This document shows, one piece after another, positions 9,253 to 56,660 of a stretch of 64,000 bases of DNA. A program made the translations under genes and the position numbers. The stretch is from the IMG/VR virus record IMGVR_UViG_3300037087_000760, positions 1 to 64,000 of that record; one strand, given 5' to 3'. Below the pieces are notes generated by a model that saw only the letters and a program-made list of their open reading frames with translations, was not told the DNA's origin and did no database searches. Each line of letters begins with the position of its first letter. The first letter of the stretch is position 1.

Positions 9253-9399
9253 ATTTAATTTTTATTATATTTTCGAAATTTAATGTCGTTTAAAATGATG
9301 TTTATAAACGACATAATGACCGAAATCAGTCTGTAATGTAGGATATAAACAACAAAAAGTATATGTATAACATATCTTAAATTTTATTTATTTTATTTG

Positions 9400-9474
9400 A
9401 GTCAGAGGAGGGATTCGAACCCACGATTGTACGGTTTTGCAGACCGGTGCTTTTGACCACTCAGCCACCCTGAC
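9400..9474 (-). tRNA. tRNA-Cys(GCA)
   Basis: Full cloverleaf, anticodon loop CT-GCA-AA, T loop TTCGAAT, U73. Confidence 0.9.
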
Positions 9475-9593
9475 GAATTATTCTTCTTTGGATTCCTCTA
9501 ATCTTTTCCTGTCGAATTCTAACCATTCATCCAGTTTTTCATCAGTAAAAGAATTGAGTAATTCTACAAAATCCTCATATAAAGTATCCAAAT

Positions 9594-10214
9594 CTATTCC
9601 TTTTTCCATTTTACATTTAATGACTTATCGAATACTAACAAATATCTATGTTTACGACTTCGAGGTCTCCATTCACCCTCGACATCTTTCACTTTCCCCC
9701 TTGATTGCTTTATATATGTTCCATCTGGTTTTTTAATCCAGAAATCATTTTTGGGTTCTGTTAAACCATAATATTGAAAATTACATGCTTTATATATCGT
9801 ACCTAAATGAAAATCAGCATCAGCATAACTCAATATAACTCTAACTTTCGTATCTTTTCTCAATTGACGAATCGCCCTCGATACAAACCAACTGGTAATA
9901 TTATGTTCTACTTTTTGAATATCTGGATGAACACATAATCTACTCAACTCAAATAAACCCTCTTGATCATTTCTTTCCAATCCTAACATCCCCTTAGAAA
10001 GTTCTGGAACTGGAAAACCAGTGAAAATAATCACACCAACTAATTGTTCATTTTCAAACAGACCGTAATTAAAACCACTTTTAAATCCTCTGGAGATGTC
10101 TTTGAGATAATGAAATTTCAATAATAATTCACCAGCTTGTTCTTTGGTAATTCTACTCACATTGAAATTTTCTTTCATACCCTCATTTATAAACTCCAAA
10201 AATGTTTTTATCAT
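9594..10214 (-). CDS. mom: Mu Mom-like DNA adenine modification protein with CTS-like N-terminus
   Basis: FHYL, GLFENEQLVGVIIF, ELSRL, SWFVSRAIRQL, ILSYAD, HLGTIYKACNF; start MIKTFLEFINE just after late motif at 10220-10229. Confidence 0.8.
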   Translation of the reverse strand: MIKTFLEFINEGMKENFNVSRITKEQAGELLLKFHYLKDISRGFKSGFNYGLFENEQLVGVIIFTGFPVPELSKGMLGLERNDQEGLFELSRLCVHPDIQKVEHNITSWFVSRAIRQLRKDTKVRVILSYADADFHLGTIYKACNFQYYGLTEPKNDFWIKKPDGTYIKQSRGKVKDVEGEWRPRSRKHRYLLVFDKSLNVKWKKE

Positions 10215-10249
10215 GATTGTATATATTAATATACTCAATCATGAATTAG

Positions 10250-10342
10250 AAGCGGGGGTAGGAGTCGAACCCACTATCTAAAGGTTATGAGCCTTTAATG
10301 ATTTATGTTGACGAATCAACAATTCCGTTTCACTCTCCCGCA
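10250..10342 (-). tRNA. tRNA-Met(CAT), initiator-like, with hairpin inserted in D loop
   Basis: AAAGG-CTCATAA-CCTTT arm, T arm intact, 1:72 mismatch; D loop contains TGTTGA-TTCG-TCAACA. Confidence 0.7.
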
Positions 10343-10356
10343 ATGTATTAAAATAG

Positions 10357-10445
10357 TAGCGGATGTAAGATTCGAACTTACGACTTCCTTATGGGAAGTT
10401 TCAGCTTATGAGACTGAGGAGATAGGCCAACTTCTCTAATCCGCG
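10357..10445 (-). tRNA. tRNA-Met(CAT) with long variable arm
   Basis: C1:U72 mismatch, TCAGT-CTCATAA-GCTGA, variable hairpin ACTTCC-CATAA-GGAAGT. Confidence 0.75.
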
Positions 10446-10451
10446 ATGTGT

Positions 10452-10552
10452 GTCCTACTGTTGGTGCGACCAACCTTTCTGGAACTCATTATACCGTAGG
10501 TTAGAGCGACCAACTTTATTAGTTCAATGATATTTCCCTCTGAATTAGTAGG
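10452..10552 (-). ncRNA. Unknown tRNA-sized structured RNA
   Basis: Closed by GTCCTACT/AGTAGGAC; two similar GTTGG-TCGCn-CYAAC hairpins; sits between two tRNAs. Confidence 0.5.
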
Positions 10553-10558
10553 ACTTAG

Positions 10559-10630
<72 letters not shown>

Positions 10631-10635
10631 ATATA

Positions 10636-10884
10636 TTATTTCAATTCATGTCTGCACAATGGACATTCTTTAATTTTTATCAACCAATGAATAGTTCTCA
10701 CTACCGTTTTTTCTGGGTCATCAAAACACACCTTTTCACCATCCCAAATTCCTACGATTGATGTTTTCACAGTTTTACCATTAACTCTTTTTATGTTATG
10801 GTATTGAACTAAATCACCTTTCTTAATATCATCTAATTGTTTACCAATCAGATTTCCGTAATTGTCGTATTTACTTTCTTCCAT
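10636..10884 (-). CDS. Hypothetical protein inside tRNA cluster
   Basis: 82 aa ORF with own TAnnTTTG promoter. Confidence 0.65.
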   Translation of the reverse strand: MEESKYDNYGNLIGKQLDDIKKGDLVQYHNIKRVNGKTVKTSIVGIWDGEKVCFDDPEKTVVRTIHWLIKIKECPLCRHELK

Positions 10885-10888
10885 TTTA

Positions 10889-10920
10889 CAAAGATATAAA
10901 TAAATATTCTAATTAAAAAA
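10889..10920 (-). promoter_or_regulatory. Bacteroidota-type promoter (TATCTTTG with upstream T-run)
   Basis: Matches -7 consensus TAnnTTTG. Confidence 0.7.
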
Positions 10921-10926
10921 TCATTG

Positions 10927-10999
10927 AGATCGGAGAGGGAATCAAACCCCCGTCTCTGAGGTTGCAGCTCAGCACCTATTTACACTCGGCCATCCGACC
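10927..10999 (-). tRNA. tRNA-Cys(GCA)
   Basis: CTGAG-CTGCAAC-CTCAG arm, U73. Confidence 0.8.
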
Positions 11000-11004
11000 A
11001 TTTG

Positions 11005-11077
11005 AGCGATAAGTGGGGGTCAAACCCACGACCTTCAGCTTGGGAAGCTGACACTCTATCAACTGAGCTATTATCGC
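11005..11077 (-). tRNA. tRNA-Gly(CCC)
   Basis: TCAGC-TTCCCAA-GCTGA, U73. Confidence 0.9.
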
Positions 11078-11130
11078 ATCCGTTTGACACATCCTTTGAC
11101 ATCACCCTCTCTCCGTTATATCAAACAGCG

Positions 11131-11202
11131 AGCGAGTAATCAGAATCGAACTGACATCATCGGTATGGTAAGCCGATACACTACACATTGTGCTATACTC
11201 GC
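11131..11202 (-). tRNA. tRNA-Gly(ACC), 31:39 mismatch
   Basis: TCGGC-TTACCAT-ACCGA, Gly-type acceptor, U73. Confidence 0.75.
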
Positions 11203-11277
11203 GAATCAGTACCCGCACTTTCCGCCTTAATTATTCCCTGTTACACTGCGGTTAGGGAGTTGGTTATGATAGACCTG

Positions 11278-11360
11278 AGCGGGAGAAGGGATTCGAACCC
11301 TCACCTGAAGTTTGGAAGACTCCTATGCTAGCTTACGCGACCGTTAAACACCACTCCCGC
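11278..11360 (-). tRNA. tRNA-Gly(TCC) with D-loop insertion
   Basis: GGAGT-CTTCCAA-ACTTC; 19-nt D loop containing GC-GTAA-GC. Confidence 0.8.
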
Positions 11361-11371
11361 GAGTGATTTTG

Positions 11372-11442
11372 AGCAGATAATGAGAATCGAACTCACATCA
11401 AAAGATTGGAAATCTCTTACACTACCATTGTGCTATATCTGC
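11372..11442 (-). tRNA. tRNA-Gly(TCC)
   Basis: AGAGA-TTTCCAA-TCTTT, U73. Confidence 0.9.
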
Positions 11443-11448
11443 GTAAAA

Positions 11449-11553
11449 GGTCAGTATGTCGAATGTATTCGGACTGATTTTCGTTTTGCACATTCCTAAT
11501 CATCTGTCTTAACATCTCAGTTCACCGCCATTGTGCTACCGCGTTTACTGACC
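11449..11553 (-). ncRNA. Unknown tRNA-sized structured RNA
   Basis: Closed by GGTCAGTA/TACTGACC; carries D-arm-like TAGCACAATGG; fills the gap between two tRNAs. Confidence 0.45.
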
Positions 11554-11554
11554 T

Positions 11555-11629
11555 TGGAGCGGGATGCGGGATTTAAACCCGCGACCTGAAGTTTGGTAAA
11601 CTTCCGCTCTATCACTGAGCTAATCCCGC
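11555..11629 (-). tRNA. tRNA-Gly(ACC) with encoded CCA
   Basis: Perfect GAAGT-TTACCAA-ACTTC arm, U73-CCA. Confidence 0.9.
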
Positions 11630-11717
11630 GTGGGAGGCTATCTAAACTCTTTGACCCAATCAGATTTCTCCTGTCATGAGTTAACTTCGCCTTATTAGTT
11701 TTTCGAATGTTTTTTAG

Positions 11718-11789
11718 TAGCCCCGGCGGGAATCGAACCTGCATCCAGAAATTAGAAGTTTCTTGTTCTATCCATTGAACTACGGAGCC
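11718..11789 (-). tRNA. tRNA-Arg(TCT)
   Basis: AGAAA-CTTCTAA-TTTCT, canonical cloverleaf. Confidence 0.9.
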
Positions 11790-11838
11790 ATACTTTATAT
11801 AAACTATTTACCACCATTAAGTTTAATATTAATTATTG

Positions 11839-11916
11839 TAACCCTGAAGGGATTCGAACCCTCATTTTCATCCGTTATGCACAATCGAGTTTAGAAAACT
11901 CAGCCATTACAGGGCT
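11839..11916 (-). tRNA. D-armless tRNA-Arg(TCT)-like RNA with 22-nt variable region
   Basis: Acceptor AGCCCTG/CAGGGTT, TGAGT-TTTCTAA-ACTCG arm and T arm intact; only TAATGGC between acceptor and anticodon arm. Confidence 0.6.
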
Positions 11917-11921
11917 ATTTG

Positions 11922-12003
11922 TACCGATGGAGAGATTCGAACTCTCACTTCCGATGGAAACAAGTTCCTAAAACTTGCGTGTCTACCATTCCACCACACC
12001 GGC
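11922..12003 (-). tRNA. tRNA-Leu(TAG)
   Basis: CAAGT-TTTAGGA-ACTTG, class II variable arm, A73. Confidence 0.9.
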
Positions 12004-12029
12004 TTAAAAAGTTAAATAAGTTGTGATAT

Positions 12030-12124
12030 TGTACACCATACCCAACCCAGAGTCGAACTGGATTAGTTGGGGTCTCGAACCCCGCTTCACACAACCACCT
12101 ACTACCGTTCAGTATTATTCAACC
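12030..12124 (-). ncRNA. tRNA-derived element with two T-arm-like hairpins
   Basis: GGGG-TTCGAGA-CCCC and CCAG-TTCGACT-CTGG plus D-like TACT-GAACGGT-AGTA. Confidence 0.5.
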
Positions 12125-12128
12125 TTAG

Positions 12129-12198
12129 CAGTACAAGCAGGAATCGAACCTACATCCACCCTCTACTGAGGGTACTCTTTCCATTAAGCTACTGTACT
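12129..12198 (-). ncRNA. tRNA-like RNA lacking an anticodon loop (AGTA tetraloop)
   Basis: Acceptor, D and T arms canonical; CCCTC-AGTA-GAGGG in place of anticodon arm; G73. Confidence 0.75.
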
Positions 12199-12262
12199 TA
12201 CACATCAATTTTATTCTAGCTTATTATGATGTGATTTACACTTTTGATGTAAATATCTTTTA

Positions 12263-12330
12263 GTACTCTAAAAGGATTCGAACCTATACTCCTCGCTTAC
12301 GCGAGTGTGCTACCATTACACCATAAAGTC
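12263..12330 (-). ncRNA. tRNA-like RNA lacking an anticodon loop (GTAA GNRA tetraloop)
   Basis: GTGT-AATGGTA-GCAC D arm, CTCGC-GTAA-GCGAG, TTCGAAT T loop. Confidence 0.7.
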
Positions 12331-12430
12331 AACTTTCGTCATTGACACTGACATATCATTTCGGAAAGAACACATATTTTACTCCTTTCTGATTGTCAGA
12401 TCTTACTCGTTTCAAATTCCAGTGTTTTTG

Positions 12431-12503
12431 CAGGCAGTACGGGAGTTGAACCCGCTCCGAACGCCGTGACAGGGCGACATCTTAACCGTTTGACCTACTG
12501 CCT
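12431..12503 (-). tRNA. tRNA-Asp(GTC)
   Basis: CT-GTC-AC loop, G73. Confidence 0.85.
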
Positions 12504-12521
12504 ATGTAGGGGAACATTCTG

Positions 12522-12598
12522 CGGGCCCAGTGGGATTCAAACCCACCTGTTATTCCTGATCGACAGTCAGGTAGACACATCCAGCATCTCCTGAGCCC
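12522..12598 (-). tRNA. tRNA-Asp(GTC), divergent
   Basis: CCTGA-CTGTCGA-TCAGG, 8-nt variable loop, T loop TTTGAAT, G73. Confidence 0.75.
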
Positions 12599-12609
12599 AT
12601 TCATTATTG

Positions 12610-12709
12610 CGGTAGGAGTTGGGATCGAACCAACATATAAAGCATTCATCCTATCAGACTACTTCTGATGTCCATCGGTGGCACCCTATGAACTTTATGC
12701 TATCCTACC
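12610..12709 (-). ncRNA. tRNA-like RNA with intact acceptor/T arm and expanded centre lacking a canonical anticodon arm
   Basis: GGTAGGA/TCCTACC-G, GTTGG-TTCGATC-CCAAC, internal ATCAGA-AGTAG-TCTGAT hairpin. Confidence 0.65.
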
Positions 12710-12729
12710 ATTTATTTTTAGTATCCAAT

Positions 12730-12762
12730 ATGTCAAAGAACATATTATAATGTCAAAGAAAC
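12730..12762 (-). promoter_or_regulatory. Tandem boxA-like antitermination elements
   Basis: Two copies of TTCTTTGACAT on the tRNA-coding strand, 20 nt apart. Confidence 0.5.
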
Positions 12763-12770
12763 ATTATAAT

Positions 12771-12848
12771 TGGCGGTACATTACGGTTTCGAACCGTTGA
12801 TTTTACATGGGTGACAACCATGTTCCTCACCAAGAGGCCTAATGAACC
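12771..12848 (-). tRNA. tRNA-Asp(GTC) with encoded CCA
   Basis: CATGG-TTGTCAC-CCATG, G73-CCA. Confidence 0.8.
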
Positions 12849-32816: not shown

Positions 32817-33782
32817 ATGAAAAATATAAACATAACAGACTTCGAGAATGTACTATTTGATATTTTTCCAGCAAGCAGAGAAAAATATGAAATTATGTAT
32901 AATGATTTTAGATATGATGAATATGGTATGGAAGTAAAAACTGATGACATACCTGAAAATGTCATAATTAAAATAAGTAATCCAAATGATAAAACATATC
33001 CGAATGTATATGGACCTGCCGGTTGGACTAAGGTAGGTGATATGAAACCTTTGATTATCGATAAAAAAACATTGAATATCAATAATGGTAGATTCGATGA
33101 CCAAATAATAAGAACCCTGTTGTTGGAAGCCATTGAAATGTATTTTTTCAAAAAGGCAGAAGAATTGGGTGAATTAAATAGGATATGTAAACATGCACCA
33201 TCAACAGAAAAATTCGATTTGAACATACCAGAATTTAAAAAGAAAGATTTGGTTATCAAAGAAATGGACGAAAATCGTGTAGTACTGAAAAGATGGAATG
33301 AAAGTGAATCTATATCCAGAAGAATATTACCTCAGATGATAAGGTGTGGAAGTTGGATAGCGACAAACGGTAGAATTGGACCGGGGAATTATCTGATTAT
33401 GAATAAGAGTACACATAATTATTTAGAACCATATTTCGAAAAATTAAATGGTGGATATTATAAGAAAGAACAGTTTGAAGAATATTACAAATCCTGTAAA
33501 TACACTCAAGATGTATTACCTGAATCGAAAAATCTTGTCGCTAAATTATCCAGTTTTAATATAATTGTGGATGATAGAGTTCCAGATGATAAAATAATAG
33601 AGGGTAGGAAAAATGGTCAGTATAAAATAGGAATAAATGCCGTTATATGGTGTAATGATGATGGTGATGTTTTTTATGAAGATAGAGAGAATGAGATTGA
33701 ATTGAGATATAATGTAGTTGATGTTGGATTTTTTCCTTGGAATCAGTTTTACACGATTCATTTAACCAGAGAGGAAAATTAA
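32817..33782 (+). CDS. Truncated major-capsid (gp23/gp24)-like paralog
   Basis: IATNGRIGPGNYLIMN, FNIIVDD, ELRYNVVDVGFFP resemble the gp23 C-terminal half. Confidence 0.55.
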   Translation: MKNINITDFENVLFDIFPASREKYEIMYNDFRYDEYGMEVKTDDIPENVIIKISNPNDKTYPNVYGPAGWTKVGDMKPLIIDKKTLNINNGRFDDQIIRTLLLEAIEMYFFKKAEELGELNRICKHAPSTEKFDLNIPEFKKKDLVIKEMDENRVVLKRWNESESISRRILPQMIRCGSWIATNGRIGPGNYLIMNKSTHNYLEPYFEKLNGGYYKKEQFEEYYKSCKYTQDVLPESKNLVAKLSSFNIIVDDRVPDDKIIEGRKNGQYKIGINAVIWCNDDGDVFYEDRENEIELRYNVVDVGFFPWNQFYTIHLTREEN

Positions 33783-41201: not shown

Positions 41202-41969
41202 TTAATACATTCTATTTGGTGGAATAAAATCTCTTTTCCATCTATAATGTCCATTTGTTATTCTGAATTCACAATAATAAGCTGATAAACTGGATATTAC
41301 TGATGATATTCCACCAATCAAATATGGAAAATTAAGAAGGGGCATTGAATAAGTTGGTGTTATTTTTTTAGTCGCCACTATTTTCCCATTAAAAAATAAT
41401 CTTATCGTATCAAAATATCTGGATACAGCCACATGATACCAATTTACAGCGTCGGGCCAAATACTTGTAATTCCTGACATGGTTAAAAAGAAGTCCCATG
41501 AACCAGCATTTTTTACCCCAAAAGTTAATCCTGTACTGTGGGTTAATAACGGGGAAATCCCACCATCAATAAAAAAACCGTAGAAATTATTTGAATTGAA
41601 AACACAACCATTACTTCCAAAATTTTGTCCGACTGCTGATATAGGACCACCACCAGTTACTTTTATCCAAAAATCTATGCAGAAATTATTTGTTCCAAAA
41701 TTCCAATCGCTTGTGTTAGTATCACAAGATAGTACACGAAATCCACCACCGAATGATGTTGCATTCCAACATGGACTATTATTGAAAACTCCACCAGTTG
41801 AAGATTGTGTTACTCCAGTTAATGTACATTGATGGGGGGAAGAAGATCCTCTCGACACATCCCAAAAATAAGGTTTTGGTGGTGGAATGGGCGTTATGAC
41901 AGTTTCATTTCCATGTGATAAAAATGTACAGAATTTATCATTACCAAATCCATTTTTATGTGTTATCAT
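41202..41969 (-). CDS. LamG/concanavalin-A-like virion protein
   Basis: FCIDFWIK, WYHVAVSR, LFFNGK, EFRITNG. Confidence 0.8.
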   Translation of the reverse strand: MITHKNGFGNDKFCTFLSHGNETVITPIPPPKPYFWDVSRGSSSPHQCTLTGVTQSSTGGVFNNSPCWNATSFGGGFRVLSCDTNTSDWNFGTNNFCIDFWIKVTGGGPISAVGQNFGSNGCVFNSNNFYGFFIDGGISPLLTHSTGLTFGVKNAGSWDFFLTMSGITSIWPDAVNWYHVAVSRYFDTIRLFFNGKIVATKKITPTYSMPLLNFPYLIGGISSVISSLSAYYCEFRITNGHYRWKRDFIPPNRMY

Positions 41970-43141
41970 ACATAAGGTATTATTTCAGGAACATCATTTA
42001 TAAATGTTAAAGCAACAGTTAAATCAGAAGCATCTGCCCCAACAGGAAAAATACCACCTTTTTGTGTGGTAGTTAATTCTAAAACATCACCCATTTTTAT
42101 GTTGTATTTATTAATATCAATTCCAATATCAGTAGAAGTATATGAAATGGAATTCATCTCAATTCCATCACCAGAATTATCCGTGCTAACCTTCTTCGAA
42201 TTAATTGTAGCATTTATTTTTGGTTGTATAGTTGCATTGGCATCGGATTTATGAACCCCCATTATTCTAACTAAAAGAGCAGAGTATTTTTGCCACTCAT
42301 ATCTAAATAAATTTAAATCGGATAATAAAGTTAATCCAGATACCATAGCATAAGATCCAGATATATTAAAATATTCATCTAAAACCATTTCCGGATTTCC
42401 ATAATATAAATTTTGTATATCGGGAAGATCACCAGTAAGAGGTGCACCAGCGATATAAATTGTATCCACTGTCATTCCAGTAATAATTCCATATTTCGAA
42501 ATCGAGGCTGTATTTCCACTATCAAAAAAGTATTTAAGAGGTGTTCCTATTTTTAAAGGACCGGGAGTTGTATTCGTATCCAGCCATGTCGTATCTGTAA
42601 ATGTGATACTATTTAAAGTTGTTGGAGTGATTGTAAATCCAGAGGGATTAATTAATGTCCAACGATCAGATGCTGTTGGTGTACTTCCATTCATACCAGA
42701 AGTACCAGCTGTTCCATTAACACCAACACCACTCGTTCCACTCGATCCACGGCCACTTGTTCCTGAACTACCTAAAAAAGTACCATCTTTCCCAGAACTA
42801 CCACTTGTCCCATGAGTACCAAGAAAACTACCATCTGCACCAGAAGTACCAGCTGTTCCACCTGTTCCCTGAGGTCCGACAACAGATAATCCACTTGTTC
42901 CAGCCGTTGCACTTGTTCCAGCACTTCCACTTTTACCTGATGTACCTGAAATACCACTCGTTCCATTTATACCAGCTGTTACCCCACTTTGAATATAAGT
43001 AATATTACCGTATTCATCCATTTGGGCTAATTTTCCACCCAATTGTGTTCCACCTGAGGTATCATATCCAAGAAGAAGCCACCCATCTCTGGGAAATTCT
43101 ACTTGTGTAAAATCTTGTACTTTAAGTTTTAATATACTCAT
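41966..43141 (-). CDS. Tail-fibre-like protein with GTSG repeats
   Basis: G-T-S-G-x repeat tract; late motif at 43162-43171. Confidence 0.65.
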   Translation of the reverse strand: MSILKLKVQDFTQVEFPRDGWLLLGYDTSGGTQLGGKLAQMDEYGNITYIQSGVTAGINGTSGISGTSGKSGSAGTSATAGTSGLSVVGPQGTGGTAGTSGADGSFLGTHGTSGSSGKDGTFLGSSGTSGRGSSGTSGVGVNGTAGTSGMNGSTPTASDRWTLINPSGFTITPTTLNSITFTDTTWLDTNTTPGPLKIGTPLKYFFDSGNTASISKYGIITGMTVDTIYIAGAPLTGDLPDIQNLYYGNPEMVLDEYFNISGSYAMVSGLTLLSDLNLFRYEWQKYSALLVRIMGVHKSDANATIQPKINATINSKKVSTDNSGDGIEMNSISYTSTDIGIDINKYNIKMGDVLELTTTQKGGIFPVGADASDLTVALTFINDVPEIIPYV

Positions 43142-43178
43142 TTGACTGTTTTCTTTTTGATTATATATTAAAATTTGA

Positions 43179-43206
43179 AAACTTCTTTTGAATTAAAGAA
43201 TATAAT
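43179..43206 (+). promoter_or_regulatory. AAACTTCT-N14-TATAAT promoter
   Basis: Member of recurrent 14-nt-spaced class. Confidence 0.6.
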
Positions 43207-43211
43207 AATCA

Positions 43212-43392
43212 CAAGGAGCCTGAATCTCTCTTGTCGTTTGTGGTGTCTCAACGAATGATGACACGGCTTCGATGGCTCGGCATAAAACCATTCGGTTTTC
43301 TCTTTCACTGATGTGCGAAGGTTACAAATATGTTTGAAAGAGTTTCACGATAGAAATGACCCCGATTTTTTCAGGTAAAATCGGGGTTTTTT
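43212..43392 (+). ncRNA. Unknown ~180-nt structured RNA
   Basis: GAGCC/GGCTC, GTGTC/GACAC, AAAACC/GGTTTT, CTCTTTCA/TGAAAGAG stems; own promoter and terminator; no ORF. Confidence 0.6.
43359..43392 (+). terminator. Intrinsic terminator
   Basis: ACCCCGATTTT/AAAATCGGGGT plus T-run. Confidence 0.85.
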
Positions 43393-43423
43393 ATTTTCAT
43401 AAATCGGCTAAAATAAATTCCTT

Positions 43424-43451
43424 AAACTTTCAATTTTTTTCTGAATAAAAT
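43424..43451 (+). promoter_or_regulatory. AAACTTTT-N14-TAAAAT promoter
   Basis: Recurrent class. Confidence 0.6.
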
Positions 43452-43457
43452 AAATAT

Positions 43458-43881
43458 CAGATAATTCAAAGGGAGTTGCTACCCAATGGATATTTGGTCG
43501 TGTACCCCAGACGTAACTGAAGTCGTTTGTAGCAGATCGTTAATTGTTACCCATTGAAAGGTGGAAAATCCTACTACACCTGAAAACATAGTGGGTAGTC
43601 TGTTTCACTCAACGAAGCCGCCCTAGCCTTTGAGGCGTAATCAAAGGACAATTTTTTCTTTTTATTGTCTAAAAAGATCGGTATATGTCCTCTTCCGTGA
43701 ATTAGGATTGTGTTGACTCTGAACACATAAAAGATTGAGCGGATTTTAGAACATCTATCCTTCAGGATGTCCGGCAGTTCATACGACAATGAAACTTTTT
43801 TATTCCTCTTTATCAAAACAAGTAGGAAGTTTTTAGCTAAAAATTACCCCCCGTCATATTTCAGGTATGTCGGGGGTTTTT
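43458..43881 (+). ncRNA. Unknown ~420-nt highly structured RNA
   Basis: Many hairpins and long-range complements, GC higher than flanks, own promoter and terminator, no credible ORF. Confidence 0.6.
43846..43881 (+). terminator. Intrinsic terminator
   Basis: CCCCC-rich stem with GGGGG partner plus T-run. Confidence 0.8.
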
Positions 43882-43887
43882 AATTTT

Positions 43888-43915
43888 AAACTTTTTATTT
43901 TTCCTACCTTATATT
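43888..43915 (+). promoter_or_regulatory. AAACTTTT-N14-TATATT promoter
   Basis: Recurrent class. Confidence 0.6.
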
Positions 43916-43939
43916 AAGAAAAAATCTCCTAAAATAATT

Positions 43940-44479
43940 ATGAGTACAATTGATCAATTCAGAGAAGTAATACAGAACTGCCAGCGTGTTTTTGTAGGGA
44001 AGATGGAAGATTATGGTCTTTCATGGAGAATACTCAGACCATCATCATTAACAGACCAAATTTTTATTAAAGCCAGTCGAATAAGAAGTTTGGAAGAAAA
44101 GAAAACATCAAAGATAAATGAGGGAGTAGAGCCAGAATATATTGGAATGATAAACTATTCGGTAATGGCTATAACTCAAATGAAATTTCCTTATAATGAA
44201 AATCCTAATTTATCAAAAGAAAATGTATTAGACATCTACATAACCGAGACAAATGAAGCTTTAGAATTGATGTTGAATAAAAATCATGATTATGATGAAG
44301 CTTGGAGAAAAATGAGAATTAGTAGTTTAACTGATATAATATTACAAAAACTTTTAAGAATAAAACAAATAGAAGATAACGATGGAACAACAAAAGTGTC
44401 AGAAGGATTAGAAGCCAATTATTATGACATCATTAATTATTCCATTTTTGCCCTGATAAAATTATCAGAGATTAAATAA
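43940..44479 (+). CDS. DUF1599 (nucleotide-modification-associated domain 1) tandem protein
   Basis: KMEDYGLSWR...RIRSLE...INYS and KNHDYDEAWR...RIKQIE...INYS. Confidence 0.8.
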   Translation: MSTIDQFREVIQNCQRVFVGKMEDYGLSWRILRPSSLTDQIFIKASRIRSLEEKKTSKINEGVEPEYIGMINYSVMAITQMKFPYNENPNLSKENVLDIYITETNEALELMLNKNHDYDEAWRKMRISSLTDIILQKLLRIKQIEDNDGTTKVSEGLEANYYDIINYSIFALIKLSEIK

Positions 44480-44535
44480 TACAACAAACAACAAACAAAA
44501 CAACAAACAACAAACAAAAAATAATCAACAAAACA
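44480..44535 (+). repeat. CAA/CAAA low-complexity tract in 5' leader
   Basis: ACAACAAACAACAAACAAA duplicated. Confidence 0.7.
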
Positions 44536-45423
44536 ATGAAAGAAAGAGAAACAAAGATTGGAACTTTCAGAATCGTCCAGAACGATACTGGATTAACATT
44601 TTATCATGATGATACTGGAATATGGTATTCACTCACACCAAATTCAGTAGAAGAACTTAAAAAATTTCTTACATTATCTGAAAAAAAGGAAATTTCTTAT
44701 TTAGATAGAACATATTTAGATAAAAGAAGAATATTAAGACAATTATCCATAAAAGATGAAATAAGAAATTATGTCAATATAATGTCCGATAAAGTATGGG
44801 AAAAATTATTATCTTCCATAGAACATACACAGAAATTTAATTTTCTTGAGGAACTTCAATTATATTTTCACATTAAATGTTTATTAATTGATGGGTATTT
44901 AGCTTTCGAAGTGGTATACAATGAAAAACAAACGGACATTATCGACTTATCTCCAATAGATCCTTGTAGTTTAACACCTATATTTCATTCATCCGCTGGT
45001 GAAAGAAAAAATGATTTTGATTGGATACAACATAATGATAATGAAAAACTTAAAAGAGTTTTATCTCAAAATCAAGTGATTTATATATCATACTCACCCG
45101 ATCATGAATATGGTCCGACTTCTTATGTTGAAGAATTAAAAGAGTCGTATGAAAAAGTTAAGACATTGGAAAATGAATTGATGGCATCAAGAATGAATCT
45201 TCCCGGTAATGTTGGAGAAAAATTGGGTGGAGAAATAGCTTTCAAACAATTAAAAAGAGCTGATAAGAAATTACAATTTATGTCTAAAATTCCTAAATCT
45301 ATTTTGAAAGAAGAAAAAACTTTTAGTGATGATGTAAGATATAAAACATTCTTGAATAGAATATGTAATATATTTGAAACTGATCTAATAGGAAAATTAA
45401 TCGAACTAAAAAATAATCTTTAA
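44536..45423 (+). CDS. Truncated portal (gp20)-like paralog
   Basis: IDGYLAFEVVY, IIDLSPIDP, QVIYISYS, SYVEELKESYEKVKTLE resemble the gp20 N-terminal half. Confidence 0.6.
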   Translation: MKERETKIGTFRIVQNDTGLTFYHDDTGIWYSLTPNSVEELKKFLTLSEKKEISYLDRTYLDKRRILRQLSIKDEIRNYVNIMSDKVWEKLLSSIEHTQKFNFLEELQLYFHIKCLLIDGYLAFEVVYNEKQTDIIDLSPIDPCSLTPIFHSSAGERKNDFDWIQHNDNEKLKRVLSQNQVIYISYSPDHEYGPTSYVEELKESYEKVKTLENELMASRMNLPGNVGEKLGGEIAFKQLKRADKKLQFMSKIPKSILKEEKTFSDDVRYKTFLNRICNIFETDLIGKLIELKNNL

Positions 45424-45426
45424 AAC

Positions 45427-45765
45427 ATGCCAAAATCAAGGACAAATAAAAAGAGACAAAAAAAAGTGGTGGCTTATAAATCGAAAATTCAAGCTAATAA
45501 GAGAAGAATAAGAGAAGTATTCTTAAAAGGATTACAAGAAGCACATGCTAAAAAAATGGATGATCAAATAAAATCTGGTCAATCAACTGGAACTACCGTA
45601 GAAGGATTAGATGAATTCAATTTGGAAAATAATTCTGAAACACCACAGGAACAATCACAGCAACCTGTAATTGAAGGATTATCTGAACTTGGTGATTTGG
45701 GTGAAATTCAACAAGTGGAATTGAAGGGTGCACCACCTGATTCATTTTCTGGTATTGTTAAATAA
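45427..45765 (+). CDS. Hypothetical protein with basic N-terminus and acidic tail
   Basis: MPKSRTNKKRQKK. Confidence 0.65.
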   Translation: MPKSRTNKKRQKKVVAYKSKIQANKRRIREVFLKGLQEAHAKKMDDQIKSGQSTGTTVEGLDEFNLENNSETPQEQSQQPVIEGLSELGDLGEIQQVELKGAPPDSFSGIVK

Positions 45766-45800
45766 AGAAACCCTGTGAAAATTTCACAGGGTTTTCTTTT
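45764..45800. terminator. Bidirectional terminator
   Basis: AAACCCTGTGAAA/TTTCACAGGGTTT between convergent genes. Confidence 0.85.
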
Positions 45801-45832
45801 TATTAATCTTTTTTGAATATTTCACAATGTTT

Positions 45833-46900
45833 TTAATCTAACCTTGTTCCACACATAGGACACCATCCATAATTTTTATTTCTAACTCTATATCCACATC
45901 TCTTATTAGGACAGTATTCTCTTCCTTGTGTTTTCACATAAGATGTATTATTAAAATTAGCGTTCGGAATTATATATGGATTATCCTGAAGTTTGAATGG
46001 ACCCGATTGATAAGGTGCTGATTGAAATGGAACATTATCATTTTTCTTTTCTGAGAATGGTAACAATTTAAAACAATAAGTTTTAATAATTGAACCACAA
46101 GTAAATTCAGTTTCCGAAAAATGTTGATTGGATTTCTTACCTTTTTCAATACGACCAGTTTCACTTAAACTCTCTGATAATAAACCATTGAATTTTAGAT
46201 TACCTCTTACATTCAAATCTCCATTGATATCAACATTACCTTTTAAATTAATATTGTTATTTAGATTTGTTGTGTATTTTCCATTAACATTGGTGGAATC
46301 TGAACTCAAACCGGCCGAACCGATATTCGGACTATTCGGACTATTTACTGACCCCCAATTTTTACCTTGATCACATACATTAATTTGTTGATCATATAAT
46401 GGATCACCACAGTAATATATTGGCCATGAAGGTGGAGTATATGGTGTTGTCCCCGGCCATGGTGTCGGCCATGGTGAAACTGGTGGAACATATGGTGGAT
46501 TGTTAATAATAATCGGACCATTTGTCCATGTATTCATACCATTCAATTTAGATTCATTCCAAAAAATGACTTCTAATTTCCCATTACCTTTAATGGCTTG
46601 TTTTGTTAATGGATTATTCTTGTCTACAAGATATGTATTGAATTTTAATTTCCTATTCGTACCGATGAATCGTTCAACAATAACGGATTGACCGGGATTA
46701 AGGACTAATATTGAATTGTCCGTTTCCGACCCATTCATTTTTAATTGAAAACCAACTCTCTCTGATAAAGGATTGTAGACTTTTAGCTGAAATTCATCTC
46801 CGTCATTAAGATAAATTTTGTTTTTGTTTTTTCCGTATAATTTGCGTTTTTGACCATTGACGAGAATTTCGCAAGACGGTGTTAAATAATTGTAATTCAT
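45833..46900 (-). CDS. Hypothetical protein with Ig-like N-terminus, Pro-rich linker and C-terminal Zn-ribbon
   Basis: FQLKVYNP...; CPNKRC...CPMCG; AAACTTTT-N14-TATAAA at 47028-47055. Confidence 0.65.
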   Translation of the reverse strand: MNYNYLTPSCEILVNGQKRKLYGKNKNKIYLNDGDEFQLKVYNPLSERVGFQLKMNGSETDNSILVLNPGQSVIVERFIGTNRKLKFNTYLVDKNNPLTKQAIKGNGKLEVIFWNESKLNGMNTWTNGPIIINNPPYVPPVSPWPTPWPGTTPYTPPSWPIYYCGDPLYDQQINVCDQGKNWGSVNSPNSPNIGSAGLSSDSTNVNGKYTTNLNNNINLKGNVDINGDLNVRGNLKFNGLLSESLSETGRIEKGKKSNQHFSETEFTCGSIIKTYCFKLLPFSEKKNDNVPFQSAPYQSGPFKLQDNPYIIPNANFNNTSYVKTQGREYCPNKRCGYRVRNKNYGWCPMCGTRLD

Positions 46901-55495: not shown

Positions 55496-55643
55496 AAAAT
55501 TTTTTAGATTAATAAAAGACGAATAAAAAATATTGAAAGACCAATTACAATTAATAAAGGGAATGAGAATAAAAGATATCCCGTAAATAGTAATCCAATA
55601 CTCAAAGCAATAAAATAAGATGTCGGATTAATAATTTTCTTTA

Positions 55644-55856
55644 TCATATTGTCCTAATTAAACTTCCGTTTTTATTGATAATCTTGACTTTACCACTGAA
55701 AAGTTGAACCTGAACACTTTCATTGGTAACATCATACCAATCGGCTCTTTGAGCGTCGCCACCCGAATAAGCTGTTCTTATTTTGTTCATTGTCTGGGAG
55801 TTGTAAACTTCGACATTCCCTTTGACTATTTTTAAGATCTTATTCATAATGAGCAT
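55644..55856 (-). CDS. Hypothetical protein
   Basis: TACCTTTG promoter at 55873-55880. Confidence 0.65.
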   Translation of the reverse strand: MLIMNKILKIVKGNVEVYNSQTMNKIRTAYSGGDAQRADWYDVTNESVQVQLFSGKVKIINKNGSLIRTI

Positions 55857-55907
55857 TCTTAAATTGTATCTACAAAGGTAGGGATATTTTTCGAAATAAA
55901 AAAATTA

Positions 55908-56660
55908 TTAGTCAATGGATTCCAAAATAAATCTTTGGGAATTACCAATTAAACGCTCTTTAGCGTTATAATATTCTCTGATACAGTTCCCACAAAAAGA
56001 GCAAGTTGAATGTCTTTCACAACAGGTATAAACAAATGGATTCTTTCGGAAATTTTTCATTATCTTATCCATTTCAGTTTTCTTTATACACCAATAACTA
56101 TTGATCGTTCTTTTTTTCCAAATATAATTTTTCTTGTGTTCATCTGGTACATCAGATGAATAATAGGCCATAAAAGTCAATACGACAGCCACTCCTTTTG
56201 AAGTGTAATATTCGATAGCTGGTTTCACTACATTATCAAGATTCCATGTATTAACACGAATACGGACAAACATCAAATTGTCTGGAATAGTCTTTAATTT
56301 ATGAAATGATTTATCGGTTTTAAGACTTGGATTAATGGTCAATACAACTGGTGCCGAAAAATTACCCAGATCCTTTGGAATGCTTGTATTGTAAAATCTG
56401 TCTTTAAATTGTTGAGTACTGGATTCAACGATATCTCTATCAACATTTGAATCATTACCATCATTAACTCTCACAATTCTATCGTTTGATAAATCAATTG
56501 GTGGGATATGAGGTAATGTTTCTTCTAATGGTTCTAAATAGGATCTTCCACTTTGAAAGAAACAATCTGAACATCCTACTGGACATCTACCAGATTGTGG
56601 AATACATTCAATTATTCCTGAACCTTTTACTTTGGGATTCCATAACCAATCTTGTTTCAT
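55908..56660 (-). CDS. Atypical radical-SAM-like protein
   Basis: CPVGCSDC motif; C-terminal CC...CxxCxxC. Confidence 0.65.
   Translation of the reverse strand: MKQDWLWNPKVKGSGIIECIPQSGRCPVGCSDCFFQSGRSYLEPLEETLPHIPPIDLSNDRIVRVNDGNDSNVDRDIVESSTQQFKDRFYNTSIPKDLGNFSAPVVLTINPSLKTDKSFHKLKTIPDNLMFVRIRVNTWNLDNVVKPAIEYYTSKGVAVVLTFMAYYSSDVPDEHKKNYIWKKRTINSYWCIKKTEMDKIMKNFRKNPFVYTCCERHSTCSFCGNCIREYYNAKERLIGNSQRFILESID

What the first reader, a model, noticed from the sequence alone, without database searches (positions are those of the whole stretch)
43212..43392. Stand-alone ~180-nt structured ncRNA
Seen: bounded by a class-3 promoter and a strong terminator, with four or more nested stems and no ORF. 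I cannot assign a family. Inferred: a trans-acting phage RNA.
Basis: partly seen in the sequence, partly recalled or inferred. Interest (0 to 1): 0.6.

Follow-up and report, generated by a model that had tools for sequence, protein, structure and literature searches.

The report
Orphan terminator-capped non-coding phage module
A 180-base stretch in a large Bacteroidota phage genome ends in a genuine strong transcription terminator and codes for no protein, but its supposed promoter, special folding, relatives and transcript could not be confirmed, so it is at best an unproven, lineage-specific small-RNA candidate.

Summary
The flagged 43212-43392 is the first of three modules in a 798-bp gene-free island (43142-43939). 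The island lies between a late, minus-strand collagen-like tail gene and a plus-strand DUF1599 operon, in a 211-kb, 67-tRNA phage from peat.

Confirmed:
- A strong plus-strand intrinsic terminator (43358-43388 plus T-run, -16.9 kcal/mol); such hairpins are rare in this genome.
- No credible ORF.
- A body GC of 42.8%, above >99% of coding windows and equal to tRNA windows.

Not confirmed:
- The "class-3 promoter". The genome's two real promoter classes are absent upstream, and the upstream sequence recurs only once, before the next module.
- The fold. Without the terminator, z = -0.36.
- Any Rfam family, paralogue or homologue.
- A transcript. The one metatranscriptome that holds this stretch covers only 43619-43782, in the neighbouring modules.

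The closest relative has a 72-bp spacer here, with an IS605 TnpB gene on the other side. The island is therefore lineage-specific, and part of it arose by duplication of the terminator/DUF1599-leader cassette.

Best reading (about 0.4): an orphan, moron-like small-RNA unit of unknown target. Main rival: functionless junction DNA whose hairpins act as insulators. Interest is low to moderate.

The parts
41966..43141 (-). Left flanking gene: collagen-like (Gly-rich) minor tail protein, 391 aa
   Evidence: Pfam Collagen 9e-5 and PHROG 1806 'collagen like minor tail'. Coding score 1.09 per codon.
43154..43176 (-). Late-type promoter motif (TTAATATATAAT) of the collagen-like gene, 27 nt before its ATG
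   Evidence: PWM score 20.8; training sites have a median of 17.2. It is one of about 35 such sites in the genome. It is part of the 75 nt that are 83% identical to the 735-kb phage LR756501.
43183..43211 (+). It resembles only the sequence upstream of unit B.
   Evidence: No match to either genome promoter class. The motif TGAAT[AT]AAA..ATAAT..TCA.A[AG]GG occurs only at 43189 and 43442 in 211 kb. The A-versus-B upstream alignment has p about 0.04.
43212..43356 (+). Unit A body: non-coding, GC 42.8%
   Evidence: GC exceeds 99.2% of coding windows. The fold gives z = -0.36 on the plus strand and -1.43 on the minus strand. ORFs have negative coding scores. No Rfam hit.
43358..43397 (+). Terminator A: 12-bp hairpin plus T-run
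   Evidence: -16.9 kcal/mol. The minus-strand reading has only a weak T tract.
43351..43466 (+). Terminator A plus about 80 nt downstream. This is a diverged duplicate of terminator C plus the DUF1599 promoter/leader (43838-43951).
   Evidence: 62% identity over 120 nt, E 4e-4. Collinear repeats D1, D3 and D6.
43472..43626 (+). Unit B body: non-coding, GC 45.2%
   Evidence: The fold gives z = 0.0. No ORF with coding signal.
43627..43657 (+). Weak hairpin B (7 bp) with a displaced T-run
   Evidence: -8.2 kcal/mol.
43619..43782 (.). The only stretch of 41500-46000 covered by a metatranscriptome contig (164 nt, identical, depth 5.4). Strand unknown.
   Evidence: run X15. It lies inside an 80-aa minus-strand ORF (43574-43816). 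That ORF has an ambiguous coding score of 0.10 and no relatives.
43700..43846 (+). Unit C body: GC 32.7%
43848..43881 (+). Terminator C: hairpin with the same TTTCAGGTA loop as terminator A, plus T-run
   Evidence: D1, 79% identity; -17.7 kcal/mol.
43877..43939 (+). DUF1599 promoter/leader. Homology with the nearest relative begins here.
   Evidence: Alignment with L002. L002 carries a canonical late motif here, while the window's copy is degenerate.
43940..44479 (+). Right flanking gene: DUF1599 (nucleotide modification associated domain 1), first gene of a three-gene operon
   Evidence: Pfam PF07659 1.8e-58. Syntenic with L002.

Best explanation
The flagged segment is the first of three terminator-capped, non-coding modules. 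Together they fill a lineage-specific island of about 0.74 kb at the junction between the tail-fibre module and the DUF1599 operon, in a jumbo phage of a Bacteroidota host.

The island grew at least partly by duplication of the cassette 'hairpin terminator + DUF1599 promoter/leader'.

Unit A most likely yields a short plus-strand non-coding transcript of about 180-210 nt. It would start in the AT-rich stretch 43180-43212 and be released at hairpin A. That makes it a moron-like orphan small-RNA gene. Any function would be by base pairing or decoy action on host rather than phage RNAs.

Shown: the terminator, the absence of coding capacity, the GC anomaly, the lineage specificity and the cassette duplication. 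Inferred: that it is transcribed, where the transcript starts, and that the RNA does anything.
For: - A strong plus-strand terminator has no plus-strand gene upstream to serve, in a genome where such hairpins are rare.
- The body GC is 42.8% (unit B 45.2%). That is above >99% of coding windows and equals tRNA-gene windows (43.9%). Neutral AT-biased decay would not maintain this.
- No coding signal on the plus strand.
- The nearest syntenic relative (DUF1599 75% aa identity, same downstream gene order) has only 72 nt here. Homology starts at 43877. The island is therefore an accessory insertion, like a moron.
- Terminator A plus its downstream 80 nt is a diverged copy of terminator C plus the DUF1599 promoter/leader.
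- The upstream flanks of units A and B resemble each other and nothing else in the genome.
- RNA from the same island (43619-43782) is the only RNA contig over 4.5 kb in a peat metatranscriptome. At least part of the island is therefore expressed more strongly than the flanking genes.
Against: - No recognisable promoter of either genome class lies upstream of unit A.
- Bacteroidota sigma-A does not use TATAAT-type -10 boxes (established knowledge). The -35 spacing would in any case be 20 nt (read).
- The body folds no better than shuffles.
- No Rfam family matches.
- No paralogue in the genome.
- No homologue in 50,697 phage records, IMG/VR seed scans, 80 metagenome loci or GTDB seed scans.
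- No RNA contig covers 43212-43392 in run X15.
- No phage target pairs better than with shuffled controls.
- High GC could equally mean recently acquired foreign DNA.
Confidence: 0.4

Rival explanations
1. Functionless junction DNA with insulating hairpins. The island is a scar of recombination or insertion at a module boundary, made of foreign or decayed sequence. Only the hairpins matter: they stop stray transcription between the late tail-fibre promoter and the DUF1599 operon. No discrete functional RNA is made from 43212-43392.
For: - The synteny breakpoint lies exactly here. The relative carries an IS605 TnpB gene at the same junction.
- No promoter.
- No fold signal.
- No conservation.
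- No RNA over unit A.
- Cassette duplication suggests sloppy recombination.
- Hairpin A is also flagged as a weak minus-strand terminator.
Against: - In a 30.6% GC genome, neutral DNA should be AT-rich, yet units A and B are at 43-45% GC.
- Three plus-strand terminators in a row are more than insulation needs.
- No translated similarity to any neighbouring or fetched protein reveals a decayed gene.
- Part of the island is expressed.
Confidence: 0.3
2. Cis-acting leader. Units A-C form a long structured leader with a cascade of terminators upstream of the DUF1599 operon. A phage antiterminator or processive antitermination RNA element would read through them (lambda nut or HK022 put logic), timing the operon.
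For: - In this phage the DUF1599 operon lacks a canonical promoter of either class directly upstream. The late motif present in the relative is degenerate here.
- All three terminators point towards the operon.
Against: - No promoter was found at the upstream end either.
- Two terminators of -17 kcal/mol would have to be overcome.
- The relative expresses the operon from a 72-nt spacer without any of this.
- No riboswitch or leader family matches.
- The flagged unit is 550 nt from the gene.
Confidence: 0.08
3. Remnant of a miniature IS200/IS605-type element. Hairpins A and C, which are similar, lie in the same orientation and are 490 nt apart, would be its subterminal palindromes. The RNA seen would be a leftover guide-RNA-like transcript.
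For: - Two related CCCC...GGGG hairpins share a loop and lie in the same orientation.
- An IS605 TnpB gene sits at the same junction in the nearest relative.
Against: - No other copy of the hairpin exists in the genome or in IMG/VR.
- No tnpA/tnpB remnant in the window's genome.
- No match to the IS605-orfB RNA families of Rfam.
- Both hairpins carry classic terminator T-runs.
- The relative shows no such hairpin next to its tnpB start.
Confidence: 0.05
4. A small protein gene explains the segment, either one of the 21-27 aa plus-strand ORFs or the 32-46 aa minus-strand ORFs.
For: ORFs exist. The 32-aa minus-strand ORF 43193-43291 has a mildly positive hexamer score of 0.30.
Against: - Plus-strand ORFs score -0.5 to -1.0 per codon.
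- No Pfam or PHROG match for the 46-aa minus-strand ORF, the only unit-A ORF that was scanned.
- The minus-strand ORFs overlap the late promoter of the neighbouring gene and have no promoter of their own.
- The search for the 80-aa island ORF did not return the query itself, so it is not in the protein collection.
Confidence: 0.03

Closest known systems
Orphan-terminator small RNA genes of phages and prophages, such as lambda OOP RNA and the T4 stable RNAs C and D (own knowledge, not tested here)
   Same: A short non-coding stretch in an intergenic region, ended by a strong Rho-independent terminator. No ORF. GC above the genome background.
   Different: Those RNAs have mapped promoters, demonstrated transcripts and, for OOP, a known antisense target. 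Here there is no recognisable promoter, transcript, target or relative.
Phage morons: accessory units with their own promoter and terminator, inserted between conserved genes (concept of Hendrix and colleagues; own knowledge)
   Same: A lineage-specific insertion at a gene-module boundary. It is absent from the nearest syntenic relative and is bracketed by terminators.
   Different: Classical morons carry a protein gene and a recognisable promoter. This island has neither.
IS200/IS605 miniature derivatives (palindrome-associated transposable elements) and TnpB guide RNAs
   Same: Two similar GC-stem hairpins in the same orientation flank non-coding DNA. A TnpB gene sits at the same junction in a relative.
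   Different: Single copy, no transposase remnant and no Rfam IS605-orfB match. The hairpins look like terminators.

Membership tests
Any Rfam 15 family (4227 models) | Score at or above the family's gathering threshold | tested here: not met
   At gathering threshold the window yields only tRNAs, at 9.4-12.5 kb. At E<=10 the region yields only sub-threshold noise that rides on the terminator hairpins. The best is BSnc120, 23.6 bits against 114 needed.
Stand-alone bacterial/phage sRNA gene (generic kind) | Rho-independent terminator at the 3' end, not serving an upstream gene | tested here: met
Stand-alone bacterial/phage sRNA gene (generic kind) | Own promoter of a type used in this genome | tested here: not met
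   PWMs of both genome promoter classes score far below true sites. The upstream motif is not a genome-wide class.
Stand-alone bacterial/phage sRNA gene (generic kind) | Detected transcript with defined ends | tested here: inconclusive
   Only one RNA run was available, held as contigs. It has nothing over 43212-43392 and one contig at 43619-43782. Contigs cannot show absence, strand or ends.
Stand-alone bacterial/phage sRNA gene (generic kind) | Conservation or covariation among relatives | tested here: not met
   No homologue was found anywhere. The three DNA runs laid (X10, X13, X14), where they cover the island, show no differences from the window.
Structured RNA (thermodynamic criterion) | Fold energy clearly below shuffled controls | tested here: not met
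   z = -0.36 for the body. The z of -2.53 for the whole unit comes from the terminator alone.
Riboswitch or attenuator leader of the DUF1599 operon | Aptamer and expression platform directly upstream of the regulated gene | tested here: not met
   The unit lies 550 nt and two further terminators away from the ATG. No leader or riboswitch model matches.
DGR template repeat (considered because tail-fibre genes adjoin) | A matching variable repeat elsewhere in the genome | tested here: not met
   blastn of the island against the 211-kb genome gives only self hits and short AT-rich matches.
Type III antitoxin or CRISPR-like repeat RNA | Tandem short direct repeats | tested here: not met
   No tandem family in 43100-43960.
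IS200/IS605-derived miniature element | Multiple copies, or association with tnpA/tnpB in the same genome | tested here: not met
tRNA, tmRNA or tRNA-like | Cloverleaf detected by ARAGORN or Rfam | tested here: not met

The most novel reading that the evidence does not exclude
The island encodes two or three previously unseen small RNAs of a jumbo Bacteroidota phage: unit A of about 180 nt, and a unit B-C RNA of about 400 nt that is detectable in peat metatranscriptomes. They would be transcribed from non-canonical promoters copied from the DUF1599 leader, and would act on host RNAs or host defence in a phylum that lacks Hfq.
Probability: 0.25. Interest if true: 0.45.

Novelty: new member of a known kind. 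Interest (0 to 1): 0.25.

Why it matters
Small RNAs of phages that infect Bacteroidota, and of jumbo phages generally, are almost unexplored. A GC-rich, terminator-capped, lineage-specific island would be a reasonable place to look for one. As it stands, the value is mainly corrective. The 'promoter class' and 'structure' that motivated the finding do not hold up. The only expression evidence in the island lies outside the flagged coordinates. The work also yields usable promoter models for this genome and shows that the locus is a recombination hot spot.

Tried and rejected
- **Rfam** at gathering and at E<=10: nothing.
- **ARAGORN:** nothing.
- **Paralogues in the 211-kb genome:** none.
- **Homologues next to relatives of the flanking genes:**
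  - DUF1599 in IMG/VR (8 loci) and in JGI metagenomes (80 loci, best 63% aa identity): the island is absent everywhere.
  - Collagen-like N-terminus: absent.
  - Whole records of five related contigs: noise only.
  - The 295-aa neighbour, alone and as an alignment: no new close relative.
- **Seed scans of IMG/VR** with 18-22-mers from units A and C: zero hits or chance 18-19-nt hits that do not extend.
- **Hairpin-family pattern in IMG/VR:** none.
- **22-mers against GTDB genomes:** none, plus one 23-nt chance match in a 63% GC Polaromonas genome.
- **Phage collection blastn:** only the gene start and late promoter match a 735-kb phage.
- **Pseudogene test:** tblastn with neighbouring proteins and tblastx against all loci and the own genome gave nothing.
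- **Units A, B and C as paralogues:** the bodies are not significantly similar.
- **Target search against 283 phage translation-start regions:** the best duplex equals the shuffled expectation (a first attempt timed out).
- **Replication origin:** no GC-skew extremum here.
- **The 80-aa minus-strand ORF under the RNA contig:** no Pfam, PHROG or protein relatives, and an ambiguous coding score.
- **Literature word search:** nothing relevant.

Full report
**Where it lies.** The window is the first 64 kb of a 210,983-bp IMG/VR virus record from peat. Genome GC is 30.6% and ARAGORN finds 67 tRNA genes. The flagged 43212-43392 sits in a 798-bp gene-free interval, 43142-43939. On its left is a minus-strand collagen-like minor-tail gene (41966-43141). 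On its right is a plus-strand DUF1599 gene (43940-44479, Pfam 1.8e-58), which heads a three-gene operon. Typical divergent spacers in this genome are about 80-150 bp, so the interval is unusually long.

**What holds up.** The 3' end is a real intrinsic terminator. It has a 12-bp stem at 43358-43388 with 5 G-C pairs and a 7-nt loop, followed by TTTTTTATTTT, at -16.9 kcal/mol. Under strict criteria only 15 perfect-stem terminators exist in the 211 kb. The 1.5 kb around the island holds four terminator-like sites against 0.9 expected.

No plus-strand gene lies upstream for this terminator to serve. Plus-strand ORFs in the unit are at most 27-30 aa. I trained a hexamer coding score on the genome's own long genes. 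It is strongly negative for them, at -0.5 to -1.0 per codon. Real small genes have a median of +0.59 and spurious ORFs a mean of -0.36.

The body of the unit has 42.8% GC and the next module 45.2%. That exceeds more than 99% of 150-nt coding windows (mean 30.4%). It equals the windows that hold tRNA genes (43.9%). This compositional anomaly is the best positive argument that the DNA is either a selected RNA or recently acquired.

**What does not hold up.** I derived the promoter repertoire from the genome itself.
- One class is the Bacteroidota sigma-A type, AATTTTTTTATT-N14-17-TAnnTTTG(TAG), with 33 strict sites. It also identifies the host phylum.
- The other is a late-like TTAATATATA[ACG] motif, 12-30 nt before about 35 start codons.

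Neither occurs on the plus strand before 43212. PWM scores there are -6 and +5.6, against more than 24 and more than 9 for true sites. The strong late motif at 43154-43176 (score 20.8) drives the minus-strand tail gene.

The TATAAT at 43201-43206 has a 20-nt spacer to the only TTGAAA (read). From established knowledge, it is also not the kind of -10 box that Bacteroidota sigma-A uses. The sequence upstream of the unit recurs nowhere in the genome except before the next module. There is therefore no 'class 3'.

The predicted stems exist. Once the terminator is removed, however, the body folds no better than dinucleotide shuffles: z = -0.36 on the plus strand and -1.43 on the minus strand. Rfam gives only tRNAs elsewhere at gathering score, and only terminator-driven noise at E<=10. 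ARAGORN finds nothing.

**Anatomy of the island.** There are three plus-strand modules:
- Unit A: 43212-43397.
- Unit B: about 43472-43657, ending in a weak 7-bp hairpin (-8.2 kcal/mol).
- Unit C: about 43700-43881, ending in a strong hairpin (-17.7 kcal/mol) whose loop, TTTCAGGTA, is the same as in hairpin A.

Hairpin A plus the 80 nt after it is a diverged duplicate of hairpin C plus the DUF1599 promoter/leader. Identity is 62% over 120 nt (E 4e-4), with collinear repeats. The flanks upstream of units A and B resemble each other (p about 0.04). The bodies are not demonstrably related. The island therefore grew at least partly by duplication of a terminator-promoter cassette.

**Relatives.** The only close relative is an IMG/VR contig (L002). 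Its DUF1599 is 75% identical at the amino-acid level and it shares the order of the next three genes. It has a 72-nt spacer at this position.

Homology with the window begins at about 43877, just right of hairpin C. On the other side the relative carries an IS605 OrfB/TnpB gene (PF12323 7e-18, PF01385 1e-10), not the tail gene. The island is thus lineage-specific and sits at a synteny breakpoint.

No homologue of the island was found in any of the following:
- the own genome;
- 50,697 phage records;
- the whole records of five related contigs;
- 88 loci around DUF1599 relatives;
- seed scans of IMG/VR and GTDB, which gave only chance 18-23-mers;
- further relatives of the neighbouring 295-aa gene.

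The three DNA runs laid (X10, X13, X14), where their contigs cover the island, show no differences from the window. No natural variation was therefore available for covariation.

**Expression.** Fifteen public runs hold the stretch, and one of them is RNA. It shows a single identical 164-nt contig at 43619-43782, with depth 5.4. Nothing lies on the flanking genes or on 43212-43392.

Part of the island (units B/C) is therefore probably expressed above the level of its neighbours. The strand and the ends are unknown, and contigs cannot prove that unit A is silent. The contig lies inside an 80-aa minus-strand ORF (43574-43816). That ORF has a TTG start, an ambiguous coding score of 0.10 per codon, and no Pfam, PHROG or protein relatives.

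**Function.**
- No phage translation-start region pairs with unit A better than with shuffled versions.
- No matching variable repeat exists for a DGR.
- There are no tandem repeats.
- No decayed protein remnant is detectable.
- No GC-skew extremum suggests an origin.

**Verdict.** The segment is a real, unusual piece of non-coding DNA with a genuine terminator. The case for a 'structured ncRNA bounded by a class-3 promoter' is not made.

I rate an orphan, moron-like small-RNA unit as the most likely reading, at about 0.4. Its transcription and function are inferred, not shown. Functionless junction DNA with insulating hairpins is close behind at about 0.3. A cis-acting antitermination leader, an IS200/IS605 miniature remnant and a small protein gene are minor rivals.

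It belongs to no known family. If real, it would be a new member of the known kind 'phage-encoded small RNA'. Interest is low to moderate.

Noticed in passing
window 43619-43782: This is the only stretch of 41500-46000 covered by a peat metatranscriptome contig (164 nt, identical, depth 5.4). It lies in units B/C of the island, outside the flagged coordinates, and inside a weak 80-aa minus-strand ORF that has no relatives. The strand is unknown.
   Followed up: partly
whole genome; in the window e.g. 63486(-), 59831(-), 55880(-), 53505(-), 36225(-), 31433(-), 30617(-), 25436(-), 16768(-), 13754(-): A sharply defined Bacteroidota-type promoter class, AATTTTTTTATT-N14-17-TAnnTTTG(TAG), has 33 strict sites. 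It points to a Bacteroidota host.
   Followed up: yes
whole genome; in the window e.g. 2164(+), 4450(-), 19449(-)/19533(+), 31553(+), 41149(-), 43141(-), 48664(-)/48759(+), 52187(-)/52298(+), 58781(-): A second, late-like promoter motif, TTAATATATA[ACG], lies 12-30 nt before about 35 start codons. It often occurs as back-to-back pairs between divergent genes.
   Followed up: yes
window 9399-12848, and the genome outside the window: ARAGORN finds 67 tRNA genes in the 211-kb record, 14 of them in one minus-strand array in the window. This is an unusually large tRNA complement, typical of huge phages.
   Followed up: partly
L002 1-693 (IMGVR_UViG_3300025162_001865): In the nearest relative, an IS605 OrfB/TnpB gene abuts the DUF1599 promoter exactly where the window has its 0.74-kb island. 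The junction looks like a hot spot for insertions.
   Followed up: partly
own genome 88,064-88,891 and 154,652-155,914 (outside the window; L103, L104): Two nearly identical sigma-A-type promoters are each followed by 0.8-1.3 kb without called genes and ended by orphan terminators. In the second stretch Rfam gives a weak partial tmRNA hit (18 bits, gathering 47) at about 155,363-155,432. These may be larger non-coding RNAs.
   Followed up: partly
window 43110-43184: The first codons and the late promoter of the collagen-like tail gene are 83% identical at the nucleotide level to a 735-kb uncultured phage (LR756501/LR756503). Nothing else in the island matches.
   Followed up: no
window 44481-44555: The spacer before gene 44536 is a run of CAAA/CAAC repeats. 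The reads tool skipped it as repetitive.
   Followed up: no
window 32932-32958 (-): A hairpin, ATGACAT-TTTCAGGT-ATGTCAT plus a T-run, resembles the inner stem and loop of hairpin C.
   Followed up: no
window 55500-56000 and 64000-64500 (bins of 500): These are further non-tRNA intergenic windows with GC of 40% or more in this 30.6% GC genome. They could hold other small genes or RNAs.
   Followed up: no
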